A DNA stretch of 64,000 bases, from contig NC_043003.1 in NCBI RefSeq assembly GCF_006345805.1, positions 58,838,001-58,902,000 of the forward strand, read 5' to 3'. Under the pieces are notes generated by a model that was not told the DNA's origin, ran no database searches, and saw only the letters and a program-made list of their open reading frames with translations. This DNA comes from Octopus sinensis. Taxonomy: Eukaryota. Of this stretch, positions 5,639 through 62,436 are shown in pieces; the stretch's first letter is position 1; each line of letters begins with the position of its first letter. A program made the position numbers and the translations under genes.

Positions 5639-5873
5639 TGAGGCGGTGAGCTGGCAGAAACGTTAGCACGCCGGGCGAAATTGCTTAGCGGTATTTCGTC
5701 TGCCGTTACGTTCTGAGTTCAAATTCTGCCGAGGTCGACTTTGCCTTTCATCATTTCGAGGTCGATAAATTAAGTACCAGTTGCGCACTGGGGTCGATGT
5801 AATCAACTTAATTCCTTTGTCTGTCCTTGTTTGTCCCCTATATGTTTAGCCCCTTGTGGGCAATAAAGAAATA
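5639..5873 (+). mobile_element. Family 3 SINE monomer (central domain resembles Meta-type, unverified)
   Basis: Head GAGGCGGTGAGCTGGCAGAAACGTTAGC, B box GAGTTCAAATT, core GTCGACTTTGCCTTTCATC..GGTCGATAAATTAAGTACC. A 21-bp direct repeat AGAATAAACCTATCTTATTGG flanks it at 5609-5629 and 5874-5894. Confidence 0.9.
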
Positions 5874-6886: not shown

Positions 6887-7281
6887 AGGCGGCGAGCTGA
6901 CGGGTGAAGTTGCTTAGCGGTATTTCGTCTGCCGCTACGTTCTGAGTTCAAATCCCGCCGAGGTCGACTTTGCTTTTCATCCTTTCGAGGTCGATAAATT
7001 AAGTACTAGTTACGCACTGGGGTCGATATAATCGACTTAATCCGTTTGTCTGTCCTAGTTTGTCCTCTCTGTGTTTAGCCCCTTGTGGGTAGTAAAGATA
7101 TAGGTATTTCGTCTGGCGATACGTTCTAAGTTCAAATTCCGCCGAGGTCGACTTTGCCTTTCATCCTTTCGGGATTGATAATTTAAGTACCAGTTACGTA
7201 CTGGGGTCGATATAATCGACTTAATTCCTTTGTCCTTGTTTGTCCCCTCTATGTTTAGCCCCCTGTGGGCAATAAAGAAAT
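6887..7281 (+). mobile_element. Family 3 SINE dimer (head + 2 bodies)
   Basis: The second body restarts at GGTATTTCGTCTG after TAGTAAAGATATA. Flanks AAATATGTAA(C/T)ATATGGTA at 6868-6886 and 7282-7300. Confidence 0.85.
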
Positions 7282-8470
7282 AAATATGTAATATATGGTA
7301 TAATTATAAACAGAGCAAATTTTAGCCATTTCTCTGCAGACTAAAAAAACGATGAACAACCTTGATCGATTTTTGAACCATATTGGGCTCTCATCAGAGG
7401 CGTCCACATCATTCTGATGCAAGCAGTCAGACTGTTTATATACTCAACAAATGCAACAGTTACTCTATGAAGGATTTCCTAATTTGCATACCGACAATGT
7501 TTAATACTCTATAAATACCAGCGGCCTGTTAACGGGGATCTTAGTCCAAACAGTATCAAGGTACGATAAAATATATATGTAATATATGGCAAATTTATTA
7601 TTAATTTCTACACAATAAGGTGGTGTGTGGTATTGATACCATGTTGTAAAAAGGTGTGAGTTATGTGGTGATTTAGTTATGTACGTATTTAAATAGAGAT
7701 TCTATACATCTTCTAGGATTATCTAAGAGCACAGGAAACTGATGCGCATCCTCCAATCTATTAGTGGCATTGTAAAAATTTTTAAGATATTCCGAAGATA
7801 CTCCTGAGATTCTTTAAATGAATACATAGACATACACGCACAAACACTTAAGTACCAAATAGACATGTTCACACAGAACATAGGAACAAATACATACACT
7901 TTCATAGGTGCATGTACGAGCTCAAACACATATATACAGACTGCGGGTTTTGGAACTTGTCACTTGGCGACCTACTTAAACTCCATGAATAAAGGCTTAA
8001 GTAGACCTCAAAGAAAACGTAGCATACAACCACACACACACACACACACCCGCTCGCCGCCTTAACCATGAATATAAATAATGTTTATGTAATGTTACAA
8101 CATATTACGCGTCAATCATGATCATCTCGTCAGACGATATACATATGTGCGTGCATGTTTATGTGTGTATATGTGTGTGTGTGTGTGAATACGACTGGAT
8201 TCAAAACAGTATCCATAAATCAAATTTCCCTCTTGAATCATAGTTAATCTCAGTTGTACAGCAGAAAGCAGTTGTCCAAGAGACTGCGCAATGGGATAGT
8301 ATTCGAAGGCAAAAATATCTAACAGCAATCGGTAATAAGCCTAAGGTATAAATACTCTCGCATTTGATGAAATAGCAGTTCATAAATGAATAATGCCCGG
8401 AATTTGAGCACAAGCTATTCAAAAACATGACAATATAACTGACCCACTACATAAAACAACATCAACATCG

Positions 8471-10065
8471 ACAAACGCATCAGAAAGAGCAGTAAGACCT
8501 CGGTAAATAAACGCATCAGAAAGAGCAGTAAGACATCAGTCAATAAACGCATCAGATAGAGCAGTAAGACATCAGTCAATAAACGCATCAGATAGAGCAG
8601 TAAGACATCAGTCAATAAACGCATCAGATAGAGCAGTAAGACATCAGTCAATAAACGCATCAGATAGAGCAGTAAGACATCAGTCAATAAACGCATCAGA
8701 TAGAGCAGTAAGACATCAGTCAATAAACGCATCAGAAAGAGCAGTAAGACCTTGGTCAATAAATGCATCAGATAGAGCAGTAAGACCTTGGTCAATAATT
8801 GCATCAGAAAGAGCAGTAAGACCTTGGTCAACAAATGCATCAGATAGAGCAGTAAGACCTTGATCAATAAATACCTCAGAAAGAGCAGTAAGACCTTGGT
8901 GAATAAATGCATCAGAAAGAGCAGTAAGACCTCGGTCAATAAATGCAAAAGAAGGAGCCGTAAGACCTTGATCAATAAATGCATCAGAAAGACCAGTAGT
9001 AAGACCTTGGTGAATAAATGCATCAGGAAGAGCAGTAAGACCTTGGTCAATAAATGCATCAGAAAGACCAGTGGTCAGACCTTGGCCAACAAACGCATCT
9101 GAAAGAGCAGTAAGACCATGTTGATTAAATACATCAGAAAGAGCAGTAGTAATACCTTGGTCAATAAATGCATCAGAAAGACCAGTAGTAAGACCTTGGC
9201 CAACAAACGCATCAGAATGAGCTGTAAGACCTTGGTCAACAAATGCAACAGAAAGAGCTGTAAGATCTCGGTCAATAAATGCATTAGAAATAGAAGTAAG
9301 ACCTTGGTGAATAAATGCATCAGAAAGACCAGTGGTAAGACCTTGGTGAATAAATGCATTAGAAAGAACAGTAAGACCTTGGTGAATAAATGGATCAGAA
9401 AGAGCAGTAAGACCTTAAACAAACGCATCCGAAAGAGCTGTAAGACCTTGGTCAATAAATGTCTCAGAAAGAGCAGTAAGACCACGGTCAATAAAGGCAT
9501 CAGAAAGAGCAGTAAGACCTAGCTGAATAAATGCATCAGAAAGACCAGTAAGGCCTTGGTGAATAAATGCATCGGAAAGAGCAGTAAGACCTTGGTCAAT
9601 AAATGCATCAGAAAGACCAGTAGTAAGACCTTGGTGAATAAATGCATCAAAAAGAGCAGTAAGACCTTGGTGAATAAACGCATCAGAAAGAGGTGTAAGA
9701 CCTTGGTCAATAAATGCATCAGAAAGACCAGTAGTAAGACCTTGGTGAAAAAATGCATCAGAAAGAGCAGTAAGACCTTGGTGAATAAAGACATCAGAGA
9801 GAGCAGTAAGACCTCGGTCAATAAATGCAAAAGAAGGAGCCGTAAGACCATAGTCAATAAAAGCATCAGAAATAGCAGTAAGACGTTGGTCAATAAATGC
9901 ATCAGAAAGACCAGTAGTAAGACCTTGGTGAATAAATGCATCAGAAAGAGCAGTAAGATCTCGGTCAATAAATGCATCAGAAAGAGCAGTAAGACGTTGG
10001 TGAATAAACGCATCAGAATGAGCTGTAAGACCTTGTCAATAAACGCATCGAAACGAGCAGTAATA
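8471..10065. repeat. 36-bp minisatellite (variants of 33 and 39 bp), roughly 43 units
   Basis: Consensus AATAAATGCATCAGAAAGAGCAGTAAGACCTTGGTC. The ORF track shows the frame held across the array. Confidence 0.95.
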
Positions 10066-21879: not shown

Positions 21880-22525
21880 CAAGGCAGGTAATTTTGACAA
21901 GAAGGGTTAGACGATACCATCGACCCTAATACTTTGACTGGTAATTGACTTTTTCGAGCTCGAAAATATGAACGACAAGGTTGACGTTGGCGCGATTTGA
22001 ACTCAGAACGTAAAGAGCCAGAACAAAATCTGAAAGACTAATTTTCTGACGCTCGAACGATTTAGCCAGCTCGCCGCCTTTACGTAATAGTAAAAGCCTT
22101 TCTTAGTTTAGCACAAAACTAACAATTCTGAAGGGAGAAACAGTTGATTACATCGTTCCTAGGATTAAAAAGGATAAAAAAGGCAAAGTCGACTTCAGTG
22201 GTATTTGAACTCGATACGTAAAGAACCGGAAGAAACGTCGCTAAGCATTTTGTCCGGTATGGTACGGATTCTAAAACCTCGCCTACATAATTATAAAATA
22301 ATATTTGCTTCACCGAGTAGGACGTCGCGCTGGCAGAATCGTTAGCACGCCAAACAAAATGCTTTGCGTCCGGCCGTCTGTACGTTCTGAGTTCAAATTC
22401 CGCCGTAGTCGACTTTACCATTCATCCTTTCAGGATCGATAAAATAAATACCAGTTGGACACTGGGGTTGATGTAATCGACTCACCCTTCCCCGAACTTG
22501 CAGACCTTTTGCCAAAATTTGAAAC
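21880..22525. mobile_element. Cluster of three old family 3 SINE copies (two minus, one plus)
   Basis: GAACTCAGAACGTAAAG and CCAGCTCGCCGCCTT on minus; GCTGGCAGAATCGTTAGCACGCC on plus at 22328. Confidence 0.75.
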
Positions 22526-23803: not shown

Positions 23804-25559
23804 TACTCTGGTCTTCTTCCCCTGAAACCTGTTGAGCTATTCTAAATCAGACGGAATCAATACTTTACGACTGAAACGTCCTGAGTGGTACTGAGTAATA
23901 GTTGACGATTGATAGAGCTGAGACTATGGTTTCCTTTCCTGATCGGGAAGGCTTTCCATTTCATTGCGTTTATCACCAAAAAATATAGGGAAAAATATAC
24001 TAATATTTTCTTCAAGAAGCGAGTTCTAAAATCTCTAAAAGACGTACAGGTAGTACGATACTAAACTATAATGTTTGTTGCCATTATGGTGTGTTACTGC
24101 ATTTTTAACGCCAGGAAAACATCTTTTCCAGCTGGTTAACGACACACAACATGTATCTGTTATATTGCTAGTAAGGGAGCGAACCACTCCCCTTCAGCGT
24201 GGCAAGACCAGTAGACTAGACTGGTTTCAGGGTCTTGACATGTTTTCAGTATTTTCTTCCTTTTTAATATGTTAAGCATTTTTGTTTAGTTAAAAAGAAA
24301 GCAACACTTTTCAAAGAATCTGAATATTTTATAAAATTTCGACACAAGACCGGCAATTTTAAGGCGGGAATAAGTCGATTATATCGATCTCAGTGTTCAA
24401 CTGATACTTACTTTATCGACCCGAAAGGATGAAAAGTAAAGTAGGCCTTGGCGGATATTTGATTTCAAAACGTAAAGAATTTAGATAGAAATAAATAAAA
24501 CTGAAAATCAACTGAGATAGGAAGTGCATTGTAGCGCTTAATATTAACCTTGTAAAATTCGAGTTGAAATCCTATTAAAATCAGCATGGTTTTTCATTAT
24601 TTCGGGGACCCATAAAAATAATACCAGTAATTTCTTCTGTTTATGAATACTTTATATTTAACTTTTAAGTTTGCACCTAAATCGAATTAAATAATAAATA
24701 AATAAATAAATATTATCATCGCAAATGCTGTTTGAAGAAAAACACGTTTAGCAGAAAATGCCTTTATGAATTTATTTCAGTCTTATCAAAATTAAAATTT
24801 TATTTTATATACAAAATGCCTAGTCAAAAGAAATTTCAAACGAAAAAATATGAATCTAAGGGCATTTTATTGAGATGTAATTGAAATAGGTAACGCTCAA
24901 TCACTTTGAAAATCAAACAGATGTACCTAAACTTGAGCTCCCTCGTGTATAAAAAAAAGTTTAAAATCTGCAAAATTTTCGACTATGAAAAATTAAATGA
25001 AAACTAATGAAAAAATTCGAAACAAACATAGATTCATATTTATCTAAGAAAATCATATTTTCGCATTAAAAACTATATTAAAGAAAATTAAATAGAGGGA
25101 AAAGAAAAATATACTGTAATTAGTATATGCAATAATAATAAAAAAATATCAAAAATAGGAGAAAATAAACTGAAATAATTATATCAAAACATGTTCAACA
25201 ATGCTGCGGGACGTTTCTTTAAGGGCTGTGAGCAGGAAATGGTGAGAATTCTGCCATTAAATTTCAAGTGATACTCGGTTATATTTTGAATTTTTAATGA
25301 AGAAAATTTCAATATTTCTGGAGTTTTCGAAAATCATTCCCACACTTTTGTATTTTCAAAATTACGAAAAAAAAAAAAGAAGTTTTTACAGAAATAATTA
25401 TAGTTTTGATGATTTAACGTATTTGGAATTTTAAAATTATCTTACACACCCATAAACGCCTATTTCTCCAGCACCGTGGCGATAGCCACAGCAAAGCTAT
25501 GACACCCACAGTTAACAACAGCGAAGCACCACCTCTACATCAGCATTGCCCACACTAGC

Positions 25560-25817
25560 AGCAGCACCACCACCACCATTACCACTACCACCAGCACCAT
25601 TACCACCACCACCACCACCAGCACCACCACCAGCACCACCGCCACCACCACTACCGGCACCACCGCCACTACCACCGTTACCACCACCACCACCACCACC
25701 ACCACCACCACCACCAGCACCACCACCACCACCGCCACCACCGCCACCACCGCCACTACCACCGTTACCACCACCACCACCACCACCACCATCACCACCA
25801 CCACCACCACCACCACC

Positions 25818-25876
<59 letters not shown>
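25560..25876. repeat. (CAC)n-(CTA)n trinucleotide tract
   Basis: Read directly. It generates the poly-Pro and poly-Val pseudo-ORFs. Confidence 0.95.
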
Positions 25877-26289
25877 AGAAATAATTAACATAACCGAAGA
25901 CCCATAAAGTCCAAAATCGAAGTGTTAATATTGGGTATTATCGTGCATTTTAGTTTTCACGAAATAAACTCTTAAGATTATGGCGAGAGTTTGGTATTTA
26001 AATATGTTTTTTTCAGATAGCTGGCAACCCCAAATTTGTGCATTTTAGAAGGCTCTGAGGTTAATTACTCGTATATGTAACACACCGTAGTTTTTCATTC
26101 ATTAATTCAATCAACCTTTAGGTAGCTTGTGGAATATATTCAGTATATATTAGCTCGTGAGTAAGTTCCGTAGAGAGGTAATCAAAGTAGATTTAACTAT
26201 TATCAATATCAGGACATATTTGCCATCACAAGTTGTATATGTTACTTGCCGGATAATTCTATAAAGGAAGTGAGATGCACTGAAGTTTA

Positions 26290-31589: not shown

Positions 31590-31954
31590 GTCTGTCCTTG
31601 TTTTTCCTCTCTGTGTTTAGCCACTTGTGGGTAGTAAAGAAATTGGTATTTCGTCTGTCTTTACGTTCTGAGTTCAAATTCCGCCGAGGTCGACTTTGCC
31701 TTTCATCCTTTCGGAGTCGATAAATTATGTAATAATTGCGTATTTAGGTCGAACTAATCCAATAGGCAAAAAAAAAATTTCGGTCTTTGTGCCTTGAGTA
31801 GAAAAGAATATTGAGTAACGTAGTAAGGCGGCGAGCTGGCAGAGACGTTAGCACGCCGGGCGAAATACTCAACGTCATTTCGTCTGTCTTTACGTTCTGA
31901 GTTCAAATTCCGCCGAGGTCGACTTTGCCTTTCATCCTTTCGGGGTCGATAAAT

Positions 31955-40552: not shown

Positions 40553-41560
40553 ATAATCTGGACAGAATCTCTAAATACTCTGGAAGAGTTCAATATCCTC
40601 CTGAACAACCTACACCCATCTCTCCAATTTACAAAGGAGATGAGTAGTACCAAATTACCATTCCTAGATATAATGGTAATTAAAAAAGACACCACCATCA
40701 CCACAGATATATACTATAAACACACAGACACACATCAATACCTAAATTTTAAGTCGTGCCAGCCACCACATACAAAACGCAACATCCCATACTGCCTAGC
40801 CAGAAGAATTTGTACCATTATAGAAGATGCAAATATCAGGAACAAACGCCTAACAGAACTAAGAGAATTTTTGCTCAAACAAAAATACCCATCTCTACTT
40901 ATAGAAAATGGCATACAGCGGGCTATAAAAATACTCATACAACAACTTAGGACAACCCAAGGAAGAGGAAAACAAGAACAAATCATACCATTTATAGTGA
41001 CACACAACCCATGTCACCAGAATATCTTCAACATTGCCAAAGCAAACCTACCAATCATTGCCCAAAGTAATGAATTAAAAGACATAATCACGGATCGAGC
41101 TATGGTTCTTAGTAAAATACAGCCTAAAAACTTGAAAAAATTACTAACAAAGGCAAAATTTGACCTTAGCAACAAAGACCAAACATTCACTGTATCTAGA
41201 TGCAATGATAGCCGATGTGGCACATGCCAATTCATACATACCGGCCAATATATAAACACAAAAACCGGGAAAATATTCACAAATGCGAATATGAACTGCA
41301 AAAGCAGAAATTTAATTTACTGCATCAAATGCCCAAATTGTGAAGAAATATATCTAGGTCAGACGGGAAATGCACTATCAGAACGCTCACGTGTACACCG
41401 ACAACAGATTAGAGACCCAGAGGTCCGTCAGATACCTTTGAGTAACCACCTAGCAACATGTGGTCGGAAAATATATATAATATTTCCATTCTACAAATTA
41501 CACAGCCCAAGTGAAATCGAGAGGAAAATCAGAGAAAAGAATTTTATTGATAAATTCTAA
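40553..41560 (+). CDS. Penelope-like element ORF, 5'-truncated: RT C-terminus/thumb, Cys linker, GIY-YIG endonuclease
   Basis: NNLHPSLQFT, KLPFLD, DIYYKHTDTHQYLNF, CNDSRCGTC, NLIYCIKCPNCEEIYLGQT. The stop is followed by PKLN, suggesting it is slightly premature. Confidence 0.93.
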   Translation: MIWTESLNTLEEFNILLNNLHPSLQFTKEMSSTKLPFLDIMVIKKDTTITTDIYYKHTDTHQYLNFKSCQPPHTKRNIPYCLARRICTIIEDANIRNKRLTELREFLLKQKYPSLLIENGIQRAIKILIQQLRTTQGRGKQEQIIPFIVTHNPCHQNIFNIAKANLPIIAQSNELKDIITDRAMVLSKIQPKNLKKLLTKAKFDLSNKDQTFTVSRCNDSRCGTCQFIHTGQYINTKTGKIFTNANMNCKSRNLIYCIKCPNCEEIYLGQTGNALSERSRVHRQQIRDPEVRQIPLSNHLATCGRKIYIIFPFYKLHSPSEIERKIREKNFIDKF

Positions 41561-43738: not shown

Positions 43739-43972
43739 AGGCGGCGAGTTGGCAGAAACCTTAGCACGCCGGGCGAAATGCGTAGCCGTATTTCGTCTGC
43801 CGTTACGTTCTGAGTTCAAATTCGGTCGAGGTCGACTTTGCCTTTCATCCTTTCGGGGTCGATTAAAATAGTCCCATTTACGCACAGGGGTCGATATAAT
43901 CGAATTAATCCGTTTGTCTGTCCTTGTTTGTCCTCTCTGTGTTTAGCCCCTTGTGGGTAGTAAAGAAATAGG
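43739..43972 (+). mobile_element. Family 3 SINE monomer with 17-bp TSD
   Basis: TAGCATATGG(C/A)CATATA at 43722-43738 and 43973-43989. Confidence 0.92.
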
Positions 43973-46012: not shown

Positions 46013-46212
46013 TATCAATTCACTACAGCTGTTTCCAACGAATTTTTAATTGATTAATGGAGACATTACGTCTTAAGAAAAAATCATTTTCAGCAGGTGA
46101 ATACATGAACTACAACATTATATAATCAACGCATAAAACGAATTTTACTAATGATGTAATATCCCCATTAATCATTTAAAAATTCGGTGGAAACAGCTGT
46201 AGGGAATTGACA
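46013..46212. repeat. Inverted repeat, ~62-bp arms, each with a decayed hammerhead-like core
   Basis: TCAATTCACTACAGCTGTTTCCAACGAATTTTTAA versus TTAAAAATTCGGTGGAAACAGCTGTAGGGAATTGA. Confidence 0.8.
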
Positions 46213-46237
46213 CATGAACTATCTATCGGAGCATCCA

Positions 46238-48085
46238 TTTCGATAGGGTAGACCATCGATACTTAGAGGCAATCCTGAGGGCGGCTGGTTTCGATCCCGT
46301 CTTCCGCGGCTGGATAGCTGCTTTGTACAGAGGTATCCGTTCGGTAATTCGCGTAAATGGACATCTATCGAGACCCTTCGACATTGCACGTTCGGTCCGT
46401 CAGAGATGCCCCCTCTCGTCGCTTCTATACATATTGACTCTCGAGCCACTACTGAGTAAGTTGGCGACTCTGAGGAGCATCCCGCGAGAATTGGGATGCG
46501 GAACGAGCGTGTCTGCATATGCGGACGACGTCGCCGTTATAGTGTCAAGCCACGAGCAACTGGAGCTGGTCGGCGAGACACTGAAATACTACGAAGCGGT
46601 GTCAGGAGCGAAAATCAACCGGGAAAAGTCAGTGGGCTTGCAGCTCGCCACCTGGAGAAGCAAGCCCATGTCGTCCACCAGCACCTCCGTCGTGGGACGC
46701 TGGACGGACGGCCCGGTTGAGTTGCTCGGGGTCTGGTTCGGTCTGGACCTCCAAATGGAGAAGAACTGGAACGAGATAACGAGTAAGGTGGTCACTCTCG
46801 CCCGGCAAGGGGCCGAGAGGAAACTGTCCCTAGAAGGTCGGGCGGAGGTGGCGAACACGTACATCGCGTCCAACATCTACTATCGCCTGACCGTCGTAAC
46901 TTGTCCCGACCCTACCATCACCAAACTAGAACGCATTCTCTTCCGCTTCTTGTGGAAAGGATGCGTCTCGATGGTCAGGCGATCCATTTACTGTCGACAC
47001 CCGTTAAAAGGAGGGCTGGGCATGCCGTGGTTGATGATGCGCAGACACGCGCTGAGACTGCGACATCTCCAGTTCTATGTAGACGACGGTGAACAGGTGT
47101 GATCGCCGTTTGTGAGGCACGCTTTTCCGCAGCTCGTCTCCATGACAGAACTGCAGTCGCGGATCAAAAAGAGGCCGAGGAAGGGCGAATGGCACCGCGA
47201 GTGTCGCGTTGCTCTCAAGCAACTATGCCGTCCCGGGTCGACCTTGAGTGACTTCAACACAACCCAAGCATTCTATAGGGGAGGGGAGGTACGACGACGA
47301 GCTCGGGGCGAACCTGGACGTCGACGAGGAATACTTGACCCGCCTGTTCAGGACGATATTCGGGCCAGGGCCCATGGACAACTTTTAGAGATCCCTGGCC
47401 TGGCAGTACTACCGAGAAGCGCTAGCCGTTCGGGATAAGCTCTACAGACACGGCTCGAGAAACACGGGGCCGACCTGCCCGAGATGCGGTCAGAGCGACG
47501 AAACCGTTCTGCACGCACTCGTACAGTGTCCAACAATTTCCGACCTGTGGGCTTATGTCGAACAACTGCTGTCACGTGTGGGACGAGTCGGTTTATCAGC
47601 CGAGCCTATCGTCAATATTGTCACGCCTCCTTCCTTCAAACGGGAAAGAAGAGCTATTTTCATCATCCTTGTGGCTATGGTGAAAGAATGCATCTGGTGG
47701 ACGCATCTGAAAGGATTGGAGACAAGCACTTTCCTCTCTGGTCAATCTCTCATCAACTTCTTTTAGTATCACTTGAAAAGCAAAGTGAGAGTAGAGAGGC
47801 AAGTTTTGTCTAGCGAATGTTTTAAAAAAAGATGGATGAATGTAGCAAGGATGGCACGTATGAATGACGAAGCCACCTTGAGCATAATCCTATGAACCCG
47901 GAAATTTAAAACAGAGGGTTACCTACTTGCAAACAAATGTGGTAACATGTAACAATATTGACCGAGGTTACCGTGGTCTTTTCCGTAGGCTTTTCTTCCC
48001 ACGGATAAACCTTATCTGCTTCCCCTTTACACCTTACATCATGACACTGTGATACACGATTCCTATTGATCGTTTTTTTTATTTT
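46238..48085 (+). mobile_element. Tx1/L1-clade LINE, 5'-truncated: RT 3' half, C-terminal zinc finger, 3' UTR
   Basis: FDRVDH, VRQRCPLSSLLY, SAYADD (46518), LLGVWFG, CPRCGQSDETVLHALVQC (47476). GC-rich; few stops or frameshifts; T-rich tail. Confidence 0.92.
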
Positions 48086-48242
48086 CCTTTTTTTTCGTGT
48101 TTTCTTTCTTTCTGCTTTCCCTTTTACAATCCCTTTTGATCGAAAACCTACCCCACCTTTATATTTTTTTTTCGCTCCCCCAAAAAGAAAAGCTCTACTT
48201 TGTAATGTCTGTGTGCAGCAATGTGTGGTTAATAAAGAAACA

Positions 48243-52891: not shown

Positions 52892-54152
52892 GACTTTGCA
52901 AAGGCCTTTGATAAAGTCGATCAGGAATGATATGTCACAAACTGCGTGATCTCAACATAGTTGGAAAACTGGGAGAATGGCTTCATGACTTTTTGAAGGA
53001 TAGAAGTCAGGTGGTGTAGTAGCCAATGGGGCCACCTCCATTAACACACAAATAGTGAGCGGGTGTCCGCAGGGCCACTGTTCTGGGACCACTACTGTTC
53101 ATAATGCCCTCTCAGACATGCCTCAGCCACGCAGAGAGCCACGATCACAAGTTATGCAGATGATACAAAAGTTTCACAGGCAATACAGAACCCTGAGGAC
53201 ACTAACACCTGCAATGTGAGCTGGACGAAATATACAAGTGGGCTGAAAAGAATAGCATGCAGTTCAATGCTGAAAGTTTCAAGCTTTATACTATCAGCAT
53301 GCAAAACTGAATGCAATACCCAATGAATACACTGGACCCGGAGGATTGCAATCCCAGAGGCACAATCAGTGCGTGACCTGGGTATTCACATGAGTGATGA
53401 CGCGACCTTCATGTACATGTTGCTAAACTGACAATGAAATGTAGACGGCTGGCTGGATGGATTCTTAGAACCTTTAGAACAAGAGAACAAGAAACCATGA
53501 TGGTCCTCTGGGAGACACTTGTCCTAAGCCACTTTGACTATTGCTCTCAGCTATGGTCACCATCCAGTGTCAAGTTGATCACAGAACTTGAGGCGATCCA
53601 ACGAAGCTACACAAAGAAGATAGCCTCTATGCAGAATGTACGCTACTGGGAAAGACTCAAGAGATTAAAATTATATTCCTGGAGCGTAGGGCGGGAAAGA
53701 TATGCCATAATATACATCTGGAAGATCCTGGAGGGAAGTGTCCTGGACTTTGGCATCGAGAGTTACGCAAATGCCAGAACTGGGCGCCACTGCGTGGTGC
53801 CTAGGACTCCAAACTGCCATCAAGATGTAGGACAAGATTCTGTGATAGCCTGGGCTTCCGAGGCCCACAGCTCTTCAATATCCTCCCGAAGAACCTGAGA
53901 GACCTGCAGTGGGGTGGATACAGATGTCTTTAAAATGAAGCTGGATCTCTTCTGTCAGGTGTCCCAGATGAACCAACTTCACGGCAGGAGGGGCAGATGA
54001 GGCAGCTGCATCGAACTCTCTCATGCACCAAATAGCAGTTGCTCGATAGAAAGCCTCCATGAAGTGAACCAGCAGTAGCAACCACCAAATGGCGGTGCCC
54101 CAGCATGGCCACAGCTCATAAGCTGAAACTAGAATAAATCAATCAATCAATC
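52889..54152 (+). mobile_element. CR1-clade LINE 3' fragment (RT, frameshifted) with (AATC)n tail
   Basis: LDFAKAFDKVD, SGCPQG, VLGPLLF, SYADDTK (53153), HFDYCSQLWSP, YWERLKRLKLYS. Confidence 0.92.
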
Positions 54153-54566: not shown

Positions 54567-55332
54567 CTTTTCTACTCCAGGCACAAAGTCCGAAATTTTG
54601 GGGGGAGGGGGTCAGTCGATTAGATCGAACCCAATACGCAACTGGTACTTAATTTATCGACCACGAAAAGATGAAACGCAAAGTCGACCTCGGCGGAATT
54701 TGAACTTAAAGTCAGAGGAAATACCTATTTCTTTACTACCCACAAGGGGCTAAACATAGAAGGGACAAACAAGGACAGACAAACGGATTAAGTCGATTAC
54801 ATCGACCTCAGTGCGTAACTGGTACTTAATTTATTGACCGCCAAAGGATGAAAGGCAAAGTCGACCTCGGCGGAATTTGAACTCAGAACGTAGCGGCAGA
54901 CGAAATACCTATTTCTATTTCTTTACTACCCACAAGGGGCTAAATACAGAGGGAACAAACAAGGACAGAAAAAGGGATTAAGTCGATTACATCGACCCTA
55001 GTGCGTAACTGGTACTTAATTTATCGACCCCGAAAGGATGAAAGGCAAAGTCGACCTCGGCGGAATTTGAACTCAGAACGTAGCGGCAGACGAAATACCT
55101 ACTTCTTTACTACCCACAAGGGGCTAAGCACAGAGGGGACAAACAAGGACAGAAAAACGGATTAAGTCGATTACATCGACCCCAGTGCGTAACTGGTACG
55201 TATTTAATCGACCCCGTAACGATGAAAGGCAAAGTCGACCTCGGCGGAATTTGAACTCACAACGTAACGGCAGACGAAATACCGCTAAGCATTTTACCTG
55301 GCGTGCTAACGTTTCTGCCAGCTTGTCGCCTT
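54567..55332 (-). mobile_element. Family 3 SINE multimer: head + three bodies (184/190/184 bp) + a fourth partial body with an alternative tail
   Basis: Junctions at 54725/6, 54909/10, 55099/100 and 55283/4; 16-bp flanking duplication TGG(T/C)ACTTGATTTATT. Confidence 0.92.
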
Positions 55333-59225: not shown

Positions 59226-59847
59226 AAAGGAAAAAAGATCCGACGCCTGTATCTATCTATCTATCTGTTTCTCTTTTTGCTTTTTAGCCTCTCTAACAGT
59301 TTGCCTAAATGATTGCCTATATTTACAGTCTCGTCATCTCTCAGGACGTTTGAACCTTAAAACCTGATCCAGCAACAAAACGTAATTTATCTGTTACACT
59401 ATTTCGATATTTACTCTTTTGATATCTCGCCATTTAGTTAATATGAATCTCTCGTACTACTATAAACCATATTTAACTAGAAGTAAGCCATACCGACAAT
59501 TTTCTATGCTACATACGAAGCGAAAAATCCTTTTGTTGTTGTCGTCTCAGTCCATCCCGTGACCTGGGTCTTGATATACTCCAGATCATTGATGACCCCC
59601 AACCTTCTATATAGATTTCTATTACGTAATAAAACTTATACCTACACACGTAGATCATGTGTGGAAGCAGCTGTAGCTTATTGAACTGAATATTGTGAAT
59701 ATTTCCTGCAGATCAACTGTGTAATAAAGCGCAATGCTAATGCTGATAGGCAGGACTTGAATGCCAAAGCTGATCAGCAGGATTTGAACTTGGTCATTAA
59801 TCAATGAAATTAAGTACTGCTCGACGTCTTACCATCTATGCCACACT

Positions 59848-59997
59848 TTCTACTCTAGGCACAAGGCCAGAAATTTTTGGGGAGGGGGATAGTCGATAAG
59901 ATCGACTCCAGTACGCAACTGGTACTTAATTTATCGACCCCCCAAAGGATGAAAGGCAAAGTCGACCTCGGCGGAACTTGAACTCAGAACGTAACAG
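59848..59997 (-). mobile_element. Family 3 SINE 3' part
   Basis: AAAGGATGAAAGGCAAAGTCGACCTCGGCGG. Confidence 0.85.
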
Positions 59998-61210
59998 ACC
60001 TGATAATAATGTCACACTTTATTGTATTTTGATAATAGTATAAGGCCAGTAATTTTAGGGAGTATGTGTTAACTTTATGATTAAAGGGGGTGCTTCAGCA
60101 TGGCCTCAGACTGAAACATAAAAGAATAAAAGAATATATTTCTGCCTTAAATTTGAATGTTTTCGAAATAATTAGATATTGAAGTTGGACAAAGTTTCAT
60201 ATTATGTATTCGAGAAGATTAATAAAGCTCGTTGATTAGTTTTCATTAATTGTGTTCATGAAATATTTTGCAGAAGGAAATCAATTCTGTAGATGTTTTC
60301 CCATAGCAGCTTAACAAGCGAGATTACAGTATAGCGGGATTAACAACAGATAGGCCAAAAGATAGGTAGCTCAGTAAATCACAAAAAACGCACATTTGGT
60401 TGGTGCTGATGATTGACAAATCTCAGCGAGAACCAATTGAGAAAGAGGCCAATATGTCGACAATGAAATCTAAATAAATTAAATGTTTTCCAGACAATGA
60501 CGGGAGAGTTAAAAAAAAATTAAGAAAAAAATTGAAAAACGAAAAAAGAAACGAAACAGAAAAAATTATCCCAGACATACAAAATCGTTATGAAATGAAG
60601 AACAAAGGCCTCAAACTTGTTAACTGGAATAAATAAAGAAGATAAAAATAAAATTAAGAATGGCACTCAATGAAATTAAGAATAATATACAGCTCTCACT
60701 AATATGAGTGAACAGTAAATTGAGAGTATGATTATAAAAATACATAAAAATCAACTATAAAAGTTTCTATTAATCCAGCTTGTTTGCTATAGAAAGTAGA
60801 GGCATAAAGCCTTTAACCCTACCAGTAGTTCAGCTGGTACTTAGAAGCAATACTCTTTGTGTAGAACTTTTGGGTCACTTCCAAAACAGCAGGGGGCTTG
60901 ATATTGTGGCGAACTATAGTAAGAAGCAATAATGCAGATGTTTTGAGAACAAGTGTCGTTTATAGAGTCAGCATGACTTCCCGTTTTCAATGTCCTCGGG
61001 TTCCATCCTAGCAGTCGTCCCCGTGTTTTTGTAAGTTTAGTAATGTACGTTACTAATATACATTTAGTAATGCTATGAGTTTATTAACTGTATACAATAA
61101 GCAATATGATAAACATGTGGTTACTTATAATTTCAGGTTAGGCATAGCTTTGATATACCATTTAGAAATTATCTTCTCTTATCACTACCCGTTCAAATGC
61201 GGGGGAGTCT

Positions 61211-61400
61211 ATCTTTTGCTTCTCGGCCTTTTGGCTAAAATCAAAGTGTATTATCTGTTCTTAGTTTAATATCTGATATGGTCCCTATTTGGGGCCATCG
61301 ATATTAAACTGATTTTTAGAACGAGGTGAAGTGTTAGGGACTTGCTCCGCCTTTGCCACGGGTTGACCTGGTATTGCAGTGCTTCCAGGATTCAGCCCCT
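61211..61400 (+). ncRNA. U2: U2 snRNA, full length but degenerate (probable pseudogene)
   Basis: GCTTCTCGGCCTTTTGGCTAA, ATCTGTTCTT, AGTTTAATATCTGATA, Sm-like GATTTTTAG, CTTGCTCC, GACCTGGTATTGCAGT. Branch-pairing GTAGTA is changed to GTATTA and ATC is deleted before AGTTT. Confidence 0.92.
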
Positions 61401-61448
61401 ATTCTTAAGAAAGAGAGCCACTTACTGTAATGTGTTTTCTTTTTGAAT

Positions 61449-61567
61449 GACACTATTGCCCAAGGTTCCCCTGGTCTTTTCTGTAGGCTTTTCTATCCAC
61501 GGACAAACCTAATCTGTTTTCCCTTTTTACATTGACATTTCTGTGATACACGATCCCTATTGATCGT
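61449..61567 (+). mobile_element. 3' terminal ~120 bp of the Tx1-like LINE
   Basis: About 80% identical by eye to 47951-48073 (50 of the first 60 nt; 26 of the last 27 nt). Confidence 0.88.
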
Positions 61568-61583
61568 CCCCACTTTATTTTGT

Positions 61584-62320
61584 AGATAACAGTTTCAGTT
61601 GGAGTGCCCACATCAACGATAAGGTCGATATAGCTCCTAGGATGAGCTCTTGGATCTTAGGAACCTTCTGGTCCAGAGAACAAGGTCTCATCCTTCCACT
61701 TTTCTCCTCCTTTGTGCGGCCACACCTCGAATACTGCTGCCCCTTGTGGTTTCCCCATACAAAACAAAACATCTCGAGGATTGAATCACCCCAGAGGGCA
61801 CTCACTAAACGAATTGAAGGCATGGCTGATCTCGATTATCGGGACCGCCTTAAAGCTTTGAAATTCTACTCTCTCCAGCGACGCCGTGAGTGGTACATCA
61901 TTTGTATTCATTTGTGGGGAATATACCGCCAGCATTGCCCAAACGACCTGAACATTAGTTTCAAGGTTCATCTAAGGCTGGGACCACGGGCCATACACCC
62001 CTTGCCCAATTCAGGATCACAGTATATAGGTACACTGCGATATAATTTCTTTTCCTCAACAGGACCTACCCTGCTTAACATTGTCCCGAAAGAGATCAAA
62101 GAGGAAAAGGATCTCATCAACTTTAAACGGAATCTGGATAGATTTCTTCAAGGAATACCGGATAAGTCACCCATACGTGGATACAACTCACTCAACAAGA
62201 ACTCACTACTTGAATGGACCATAAACAAAACTTGACTTAAACAGGATTTAGATAATCCTATCAGGTGGTTCTATTAAGTTAGACATGACCTGGACCAATC
62301 TTTGGTCGAAACATATCTAA
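61584..62320 (+). mobile_element. CR1-clade LINE 3' fragment (second family), ORF 61642-62235
   Basis: FVRPHLEYCCPLWFP, RIESPQRALTKRI, YRDRLKALKFYSLQRRRE, FKRNLDRFL; 3' hairpin GACCA-ATCTT-TGGTC followed by GAAAC. Confidence 0.9.
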
Positions 62321-62436
62321 TTTTATCTAAGTTTATATATATCCTTCTTTCTTTCCTTCCTGAGCTTCCAATAACACTATACTTGTTCCACGTCCTCGCG
62401 TTGTTGTGTTTTCTCTTTGTGTTTTCATGTTTGAAT

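What the first reader, a model, noticed from the sequence alone, without database searches (positions are those of the whole stretch)
61211..61567. U2 snRNA joined to the 3' tail of a Tx1 LINE: candidate snRNA-headed SINE or chimeric retrogene
Seen in sequence: a full-length degenerate U2 (61211-61400) is followed about 50 nt later by ~120 bp matching the extreme 3' end of the Tx1-like LINE in this window (47951-48073, about 80% identity, shared terminal CTGTGATACACGAT.CCTATTGATCGT). A 5'-truncated CR1 starts 17 nt after that. Established knowledge: snRNA-headed SINEs (SINEU) are known from crocodilians, U6/U2-LINE chimeras arise by template switching, and some Tx1 families target U2 genes. 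Inference: either a U2-headed SINE in a mollusc, a one-off chimera, or a heavily truncated Tx1 inserted just downstream of a U2 gene copy. The 3'-box-like ATTCTTAAGAAAGAGA after U2 and the lack of an obvious TSD favour caution.
Basis: partly seen in the sequence, partly recalled or inferred. Interest (0 to 1): 0.75.

Follow-up and report, generated by a model that had tools for sequence, protein, structure and literature searches.

The report
U2 pseudogene fused to LINE tail
A decayed copy of the U2 spliceosomal RNA sits directly in front of the last ~120-165 bases of a LINE retrotransposon, most likely a by-product of the LINE's reverse transcriptase jumping from its own RNA onto U2 RNA; whether this one copy belongs to an amplified SINE-like family could not be tested.

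Summary
Rfam finds one full-length U2 at 61215-61405 (143.5 bits). It is a pseudogene: GUAGUA is GUAUUA, and stem IIa lacks 3 nt. From 61450 to 61567 the sequence matches 47952-48073 at 81.6% (E 6e-26). That segment is the end of the 178-nt 3'UTR of a 5'-truncated, frameshifted LINE with RT and zf-RVT domains (L1/Tx1 superfamily; Tx1 itself not verified). Both copies end at the same base, in a 6-bp terminal hairpin. The 46-nt spacer is weakly collinear with the start of the LINE 3'UTR.

I read this as an RNA-mediated fusion: the LINE reverse transcriptase switched template onto U2 snRNA. This is the process behind U6/U2-L1 chimeras in mammals and the U1/U2 heads of crocodilian SINEU and Tx1.

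Keno/Utopia-type targeting does not fit. Those elements insert inside U2, with U2 from nt 39 as the 3' flank.

Only one copy lies in the 64 kb. The source genome is absent from every searchable collection, so SINE family versus single chimera stays open. No target-site duplication was found. The adjacent CR1-like fragment keeps a 219-codon open frame and looks like a younger, separate insertion.

Modest interest; new member of a known kind.

The parts
61212..61405 (+). Full-length U2 snRNA pseudogene. The Rfam match is 61215-61405. A possible 5' ATC lies at 61212-61214.
   Evidence: RF00004, 143.5 bits, model 1-192/192. Invariant positions are mutated: GUAGUA->GUAUUA at 61252, a 3-nt deletion in stem IIa, a 1-nt insertion, and Sm site AUUUUUAG.
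61406..61449 (+). Spacer between U2 and the clear LINE homology. It is either the proximal part of the LINE 3'UTR or U2 3' flank or filler, and it contains the '3'-box-like' AAGAAAGAGA.
   Evidence: The best local match to the LINE 3'UTR is collinear (61404-61426 against 47905-47927, spacing 46 vs 47 nt). Shuffle p is about 0.035. The ungapped score is 20/46 at offset 47905 (z 2.6, tied for second-best of about 430 offsets). Suggestive, not conclusive.
61450..61567 (+). Copy of the last 122 nt of the LINE 3'UTR (the 'tail'), complete to the LINE's 3' terminus.
   Evidence: 81.6% identity to 47952-48073, E 6e-26; the terminal 22-mer occurs only at these two places.
61550..61567 (+). 3'-terminal hairpin of the tail (ACGATC / loop CCTATT / GATCGT).
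   Evidence: predicted in both copies. The one difference (C->T in the LINE copy) keeps the pair as G.U. Only two sequences, so support is weak.
61568..61578 (+). 11-nt filler or remnant of the original 3' flank (CCCCACTTTAT).
   Evidence: homology to the next element starts at 61579. It weakly resembles CCCCACCTTTAT about 85 nt downstream of the LINE copy's end, near 48151 (p about 0.035).
61579..62343 (+). 5'-truncated CR1/L2-like non-LTR fragment: the C-terminal part of ORF2 with a 219-codon open frame to 62235, then a 3'UTR. The 3' end is approximate. It is probably a younger, separate insertion.
   Evidence: tblastn of homologues covers 61579-62271 with no frameshift. The motif VDNSFSWSAHINDKVD matches P0049. 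There is no Pfam hit.
46218..48073 (+). 5'-truncated, frameshifted L1/Tx1-superfamily LINE copy that carries the reference tail. It has an RT, a zf-RVT, a stop at 47893-47895 and a 3'UTR at 47896-48073. It has no poly(A), and its 3' flank is T/TTTC-rich.
   Evidence: RVT_1; zf-RVT, 32.8 bits against a cut-off of 27.5; homologues from Octopus bimaculoides and Acanthosepion; sequence.

Best explanation
The 61212-61567 unit is an old, decayed chimeric retrocopy.

Proposed origin (inferred, not shown): during target-primed reverse transcription, the reverse transcriptase of an L1/Tx1-superfamily LINE began on the 3' end of its own RNA, with its terminal hairpin. It copied about 120-165 nt of the 3'UTR, then switched template to the 3' end of a U2 snRNA and copied that to its 5' end. 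The integrated product reads 5'-U2 (complete)-LINE 3'UTR-3'.

The copy is now inert, because the U2 has lost invariant residues. A CR1/L2-like element was probably inserted later, 11 nt downstream, possibly into the same TC-rich microsatellite.

Shown: the two parts, their order, their strand, their completeness at the 3' ends, and their decay. Inferred: the template switch, and the order of the insertions. Unknown: the number of copies in the genome.
For: 1. The U2 is complete (model 1-192) and its 3' end is intact. This is the arrangement reported for snRNA-L1 chimeras (PMC4494074, Discussion).
2. The LINE part is a 5'-truncated piece that runs exactly to the LINE's 3' terminus, on the same strand.
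3. The spacer is collinear with the rest of the 3'UTR at the expected spacing, so the junction may lie within a few nt of the U2 3' end.
4. The U2 is a pseudogene, as a retrocopy would be.
5. There is precedent. PMC4494074 reports crocodilian Tx1 families and their SINEU dependants carrying U1/U2-derived 5' heads, and attributes the heads to template switching. It also describes mammalian L1 making U6/U1/U2 chimeras.
6. The 3' flank of the LINE copy is T/TTTC-rich, and a TTTC/TTCC-like stretch follows the CR1-like element. This would fit insertion of both by the same microsatellite-preferring machinery. The link is weak.
Against: No target-site duplication was found around the unit, with or without the CR1-like element.

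The 46-nt spacer is not significantly LINE-like on its own (p about 0.035; 20/46). It contains a vertebrate-type 3'-box-like motif, which would point to a DNA-level U2 gene copy with its own 3' flank.

Only two copies of the tail exist to define the LINE terminus. The 3'UTRs of the closest LINE relatives from other species (L001, L002) do not align significantly with it, so the tail has not been shown independently to be native LINE sequence.

No genome-wide data were available.
Confidence: 0.45

Rival explanations
1. Member of an amplified SINEU-like family. This could be a U2-headed SINE, or an internally deleted non-autonomous derivative of a U2-headed LINE. Such an RNA would have been copied repeatedly by the LINE, recognised through the shared hairpin tail.
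For: The architecture is that of a SINE: a small-RNA head, a LINE 3'UTR tail complete to the terminus, and about 355 nt overall. The tail keeps a terminal hairpin of the kind that could serve RT recognition. SINEU families with U1/U2 heads are mobilised by Tx1 in crocodilians, and some Tx1 there carry U2 heads (PMC4494074).
Against: There is one copy in 64 kb, whereas a real abundant SINE-like repeat has at least 15 copies in the same window. U2 has no internal promoter. No other copy turned up in any searchable collection, but the species is absent from all of them, so this says little.
Confidence: 0.2
2. Chance juxtaposition. A decayed U2 gene copy, or a plain U2 retropseudogene, keeps about 46 nt of its own 3' flank. 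An unrelated, extremely 5'-truncated LINE insertion of 118 nt landed next to it.
For: The spacer is not significantly LINE-like and carries a 3'-box-like AAGAAAGAGA 8-10 nt after the U2 end. No TSD brackets the pair. The region is dense in transposable elements: a CR1-like fragment follows 11 nt later, and many repeats lie nearby.
Against: It needs the same strand, a distance under 50 nt, and a very short LINE fragment all at once. The best spacer match to the LINE 3'UTR falls at the collinear offset. The U2 lacks invariant residues, so it is not a working gene now.
Confidence: 0.25
3. A single tripartite event. One reverse transcription began on the CR1-like RNA, switched to the 3' end of the LINE RNA (or of a U2-tail RNA), and then switched to U2.
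For: All three pieces are on the + strand. Each upstream piece is 3'-intact and each downstream piece is 5'-truncated. Only 11 nt separate the tail from the CR1-like fragment.
Against: The CR1-like part keeps a 219-codon frame with no stop or frameshift relative to homologues. The 190-nt U2 already has at least 2 indels at conserved positions, and the tail has a 4-nt indel. The parts therefore look different in age. No TSD was found around the whole unit.
Confidence: 0.05
4. Target-specific insertion of a U2-targeting LINE (Keno/Utopia type).
For: Tx1-clade Keno does target U2 genes (PMC4640811, PMC4494074).
Against: Keno and Utopia insert inside U2 at a fixed site, with U2 from nt 39 as the 3' flank. 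Here the U2 is uninterrupted, lies upstream of the LINE piece, and the 3' flank is not U2. The other copy of this LINE in the window is not next to U2.
Confidence: 0.02

Closest known systems
snRNA-LINE chimeric retrocopies made by template switching (U6-L1, and rarer U1/U2/U3/U5 chimeras in mammals; Buzdin 2002 and Garcia-Perez 2007, as summarised in PMC4494074)
   Same: A 5' snRNA-derived copy is joined to a 5'-truncated 3' end of a LINE, on the same strand, and the product is a dead pseudogene.
   Different: The host is a cephalopod-like mollusc and the LINE is an L1/Tx1-superfamily element without poly(A). No TSD can be seen. A 46-nt spacer of uncertain origin lies at the junction.
SINEU-1/2/3 of crocodilians and the U1/U2-headed Tx1 families (Kojima 2015, PMC4494074)
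   Same: A U2-derived head sits on a short retroposon linked to L1/Tx1-type LINEs, and the head is thought to arise by template switch onto snRNA.
   Different: SINEU are families of 137 to about 7,700 copies, with poly(A) tails and mostly partial U1/U2 heads. No LINE shares the SINEU-1 tail. Here the U2 is full length, the partner LINE tail is identified, there is no poly(A), and only one copy is known.
Keno (Tx1 clade) and Utopia, U2-gene-targeting LINEs (PMC4640811)
   Same: A LINE physically associated with U2 sequence.
   Different: Those elements split the U2 gene at a fixed internal site. Here the U2 is intact in length and lies 5' of the LINE piece.

Membership tests
snRNA-LINE template-switch chimera | 5' component is an snRNA copy with an intact 3' end, in the same orientation as the LINE part | tested here: met
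   U2 model positions 1-192/192 on the + strand. The LINE tail is also on +.
snRNA-LINE template-switch chimera | 3' component is a 5'-truncated LINE that reaches the LINE's own 3' terminus | tested here: met
   61450-61567 matches the last 122 nt of the 3'UTR, and both copies end at ...CTATTGATCGT.
snRNA-LINE template-switch chimera | Direct junction between the snRNA 3' end and LINE sequence | tested here: inconclusive
   the 46-nt spacer is weakly collinear with LINE 47905-47951 (20/46; p about 0.035).
snRNA-LINE template-switch chimera | Target-site duplication flanking the whole chimera | tested here: not met
   the flanks share no repeat of 7 nt or more, with or without the CR1-like element. 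The copy is old and the 3' flank is disrupted, so absence is weak evidence.
SINE / SINEU | Small-RNA-derived head plus LINE-derived tail, under 500 bp | tested here: met
   the unit is about 355 nt.
SINE / SINEU | Many dispersed copies sharing the same head-tail junction, with different flanks | not testable with these tools
   There is one copy in the window. The source genome is absent from the searchable collections.
Keno/Utopia-type U2-targeting LINE | Insertion at a fixed site inside U2, with U2 from nt 39 as the 3' flank | tested here: not met
   the U2 is uninterrupted. The 3' flank of the tail is CCCCACTTTAT followed by a CR1-like fragment. The criterion comes from PMC4640811.
Functional U2 snRNA gene | Invariant branch-point-binding GUAGUA and an intact stem IIa | tested here: not met
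   alignment: GUAUUA, and a 3-nt deletion in stem IIa.
Functional U2 snRNA gene | Upstream PSE promoter and downstream 3' box shared with other snRNA genes of the species | not testable with these tools
   The window has no other snRNA gene and no genome of the species was available.
Tx1 clade of LINEs | L1-superfamily ORF2 architecture (APE, RT, C-terminal zinc-binding domain) | tested here: met
   RVT_1 and zf-RVT are in the window copy. The APE region is missing through 5' truncation, but is present in the related full-length element L004. This feature is shared by L1 and Tx1, so it does not separate them.
Tx1 clade of LINEs | Phylogenetic placement of the RT with Tx1 reference elements; target-specific insertion | not tested
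   No reference Tx1 sequences were at hand. With a single copy, the T/TTTC-rich 3' flank is only a hint of the (TTTC)n preference described for one Tx1 group (PMC4494074).

The most novel reading that the evidence does not exclude
This is one copy of a U2-headed SINE-like family in a cephalopod, mobilised through a hairpin tail shared with an identifiable L1/Tx1-type LINE. That would be a SINEU-like class outside crocodilians, and unlike SINEU-1 it would have a known partner LINE. It would suggest that template switching onto snRNAs recurs in this LINE lineage across animal phyla.
Probability: 0.2. Interest if true: 0.65.

Novelty: new member of a known kind. Interest (0 to 1): 0.35.

Why it matters
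As a single chimera, it records in a mollusc that an L1/Tx1-type reverse transcriptase switched template onto a spliceosomal RNA. Within what I read here, that behaviour was described for mammalian L1 and crocodilian Tx1, so this would be useful but unsurprising.

As one member of a family, it would extend snRNA-headed SINEs beyond crocodilians (Kojima 2015 found none elsewhere). It would also supply a head-tail-partner trio for studying how a retroposon without an internal promoter gets transcribed.

Tried and rejected
1. Genome-wide copy search was not possible.
- Exact scans for two conserved tail motifs found nothing in JGI metagenomes.
- A scan for the terminal tail motif found nothing in GTDB genomes or IMG/VR.
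- A 52-aa spurious ORF over the tail, searched against 1.84 billion protein representatives, gave only two weak, multi-stretch matches that look unrelated.
- Exact look-ups of two window ORFs found no record.
- The best protein relatives are only 65-75% identical, so the species is not in the collections. These negatives say nothing about copy number.

2. 3'UTRs of the closest LINE relatives (L001 from JGI, L002 from ENA) are homologous to each other (z 21) but not significantly to the window's tail. They could not confirm the tail or extend the consensus.

3. A related full-length LINE in L004 has no U2-like head and shares no DNA similarity with the window.

4. TSD search was negative.

5. 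Keno/Utopia-type targeting was rejected on geometry.

6. I considered that the U2 might be a working variant gene. I rejected this because of GUAUUA and the stem IIa deletion.

7. Pfam could not classify the 'CR1' fragment or its homologues.

Full report
**Observation**

Rfam (cmscan, gathering threshold) finds exactly one RNA family in the 64-kb window. It is U2 (RF00004) at 61215-61405 on the + strand, at 143.5 bits against a gathering score of 46, E 2.3e-29, covering model positions 1-192 of 192 (repeated).

The copy is full length but damaged at positions that functional U2 RNAs keep:
- The branch-point-binding GUAGUA reads GUAUUA (G->T at 61252).
- Three nucleotides are missing from stem IIa.
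- An extra A precedes GUGU.
- GAUC reads AAUC.
- The Sm site reads AUUUUUAG.

It is therefore a pseudogene.

Downstream, blastn and MAFFT align 61450-61567 with 47952-48073 at 81.6% identity over 125 columns (E 6e-26). The terminal motif GATACACGATNCCTATTGATCG occurs only at these two places, against 0.01 expected. Neither the U2 nor the tail has any other copy in the window.

**The partner element**

The sequence at 46218-48073 is a 5'-truncated, frameshifted non-LTR retrotransposon.
- Pfam finds RVT_1 in the ORF 46323-47102.
- Pfam finds zf-RVT in the conceptual translation of 47197-47895 (32.8 bits, cut-off 27.5).
- Homologues come from Octopus bimaculoides, Acanthosepion pharaonis and unnamed ENA/JGI contigs. 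Their tblastn matches cover 46218-47865.
- A related full-length element (L004) has APE, RT and zf-RVT.
- The ORF stops at 47893-47895, so the 3'UTR is 47896-48073, 178 nt.
- There is no poly(A). The 3' flank is T/TTTC-rich.

This architecture places the element in the L1/Tx1 superfamily. Tx1 itself was not tested, because no reference sequences were available.

Both tail copies end at the same base, in a 6-bp hairpin (ACGATC-CCTATT-GATCGT, 61550-61567). The single difference, C->T in the LINE copy, keeps the pair as G.U. With only two sequences this is suggestive only.

**The junctions**

Between the U2 end and the clear homology lie about 46 nt. Their best local match to the LINE 3'UTR is 61404-61426 against 47905-47927. 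That match is collinear and at the expected spacing, 46 vs 47 nt (shuffle p about 0.035). The ungapped score at that offset is 20/46 (z 2.6), tied for second-best of about 430 offsets. The LINE-derived part may therefore be nearly the whole 3'UTR, starting within a few nt of the U2 3' end, but this is not established.

After the tail come 11 nt (CCCCACTTTAT). Then, from 61579, comes the C-terminal part of another non-LTR ORF2. It keeps an open frame of 219 codons to 62235, with no frameshift relative to homologues. Pfam does not classify it, so 'CR1' remains a label by resemblance.

The 190-nt U2 already carries at least two indels at conserved positions, and the tail carries a 4-nt indel. The CR1-like fragment therefore looks younger, and I treat it as a later, separate insertion.

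A TTTC/TTCC-like stretch follows its 3' end (62344-62361). This resembles the T/TTTC-rich flank of the LINE copy. It would fit two elements having used one microsatellite, but that is inference.

No target-site duplication was found.

**Comparison with known systems**

Kojima 2015 (PMC4494074) describes SINEU:
- These are crocodilian SINEs with U1/U2-derived heads, mobilised by Tx1-Mar LINEs.
- Some of those LINEs themselves carry U1/U2 heads.
- The heads are attributed to template switching onto snRNAs.
- No SINEU was found outside crocodilians.
- One Tx1 group prefers (TTCC)n/(TTTC)n microsatellites.

The same paper summarises the mammalian snRNA-L1 chimeras.

Kojima and Jurka 2015 (PMC4640811) show that Keno and Utopia insert inside U2, with U2 from nt 39 as the 3' flank. 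The present locus has the opposite geometry: an uninterrupted U2 lies upstream of the LINE piece. The other LINE copy in the window is not near any U2. The U2-targeting reading is therefore rejected.

**Interpretation**

The arrangement is a complete, 3'-intact snRNA copy, then a 5'-truncated but 3'-complete LINE tail, on the same strand, both decayed. This is the signature of a fusion made at the RNA level by the LINE reverse transcriptase switching templates during target-primed reverse transcription.

My estimates for the competing readings are:

| Reading | Probability |
|---|---|
| Solitary or low-copy chimera | about 0.45 |
| Member of an amplified SINEU-like or internally deleted non-autonomous family | about 0.2 |
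| Chance juxtaposition of a U2 gene relic or retropseudogene with a short LINE insertion | about 0.25 |
| Single tripartite event including the CR1-like fragment | about 0.05 |

The chance-juxtaposition reading survives because the spacer is not demonstrably LINE-derived and no TSD was found.

**What could not be done**

The decisive test is the copy number of the junction in the source genome, and it was out of reach.
- The species is not in the searchable collections. The best LINE and CR1-like protein relatives are only 65-75% identical.
- Exact look-ups of window ORFs fail.
- Motif scans of JGI metagenomes, GTDB genomes and IMG/VR are empty.
- A peptide search over the tail finds nothing relevant.
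- The 3'UTRs of the nearest LINE relatives do not align with the tail.

As a yardstick, a real abundant SINE-like repeat has at least 15 copies in this window, and the U2-tail unit has one. This bounds its abundance only loosely.

**Verdict**

The locus is best filed as a new example of a known kind, an snRNA-LINE chimeric retrocopy. It keeps a roughly one-in-five chance of being a SINEU-like family member, which would be the more interesting result.

Noticed in passing
window 59847-59999, 54569-54706, 54791-54892, 54974-55082, 55165-55268, 5705-5808(-), 6936-7037(-), 7120-7221(-), 31657-31804(-), 22376-22524(-), 43802-43903(-) and others: A high-copy 105-150-nt dispersed repeat, partly in short tandem clusters, with at least 15 copies in 64 kb. 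Its complement carries a tRNA B-box-like GAGTTCAAATTCCGCC, so it is probably a tRNA-derived SINE of this genome. Its tail does not match the LINE tail studied here.
   Followed up: partly
window 48074-48142: A 37-nt T/TTTC-rich stretch follows the LINE end at 48073. Next comes a 32-nt 'mini-tail' (CTGCTTTCCCTTTTACAATCCCTTTTGATCG) that resembles the LINE tail with an internal deletion. It may be a remnant of a tandem or earlier insertion at the same site. The individual matches are weak (E 1.4 and 3.9).
   Followed up: partly
window 46020-46205: A MITE-like inverted repeat (CACTACAGCTGTTTCCAACGAATTTTTAATTGATTAATGG ... CCATTAATCATTTAAAAATTCGGTGGAAACAGCTGTAGGG) lies directly upstream of the truncated 5' end of the LINE.
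   Followed up: no
window 40640-41560 (+): An intact 306-aa ORF with a weak GIY-YIG endonuclease match at its C-terminus (E 9e-4, below the Pfam cut-off). It may be a Penelope-like element.
   Followed up: no
window 53209-53811 (+): A second, more diverged CR1/L2-like ORF2 fragment. No U2 or LINE-tail sequence lies next to it.
   Followed up: partly
window 62344-62361: The TTTC/TTCC-like stretch CCTTCTTTCTTTCCTTCC lies right after the presumed 3' end of the CR1-like element. It is similar in kind to the T/TTTC-rich 3' flank of the LINE copy at 48074 onwards. Both elements may have inserted into a TC-rich microsatellite.
   Followed up: no
window 8456-10063 and 25496-25918: Long tandem arrays, with a 36-nt period at 8.4-10.1 kb and a 9/12-nt period at 25.5-25.9 kb. 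The window also has very abundant (TA)n, (CA)n, (CATA)n and (CTTT)n microsatellites throughout.
   Followed up: no
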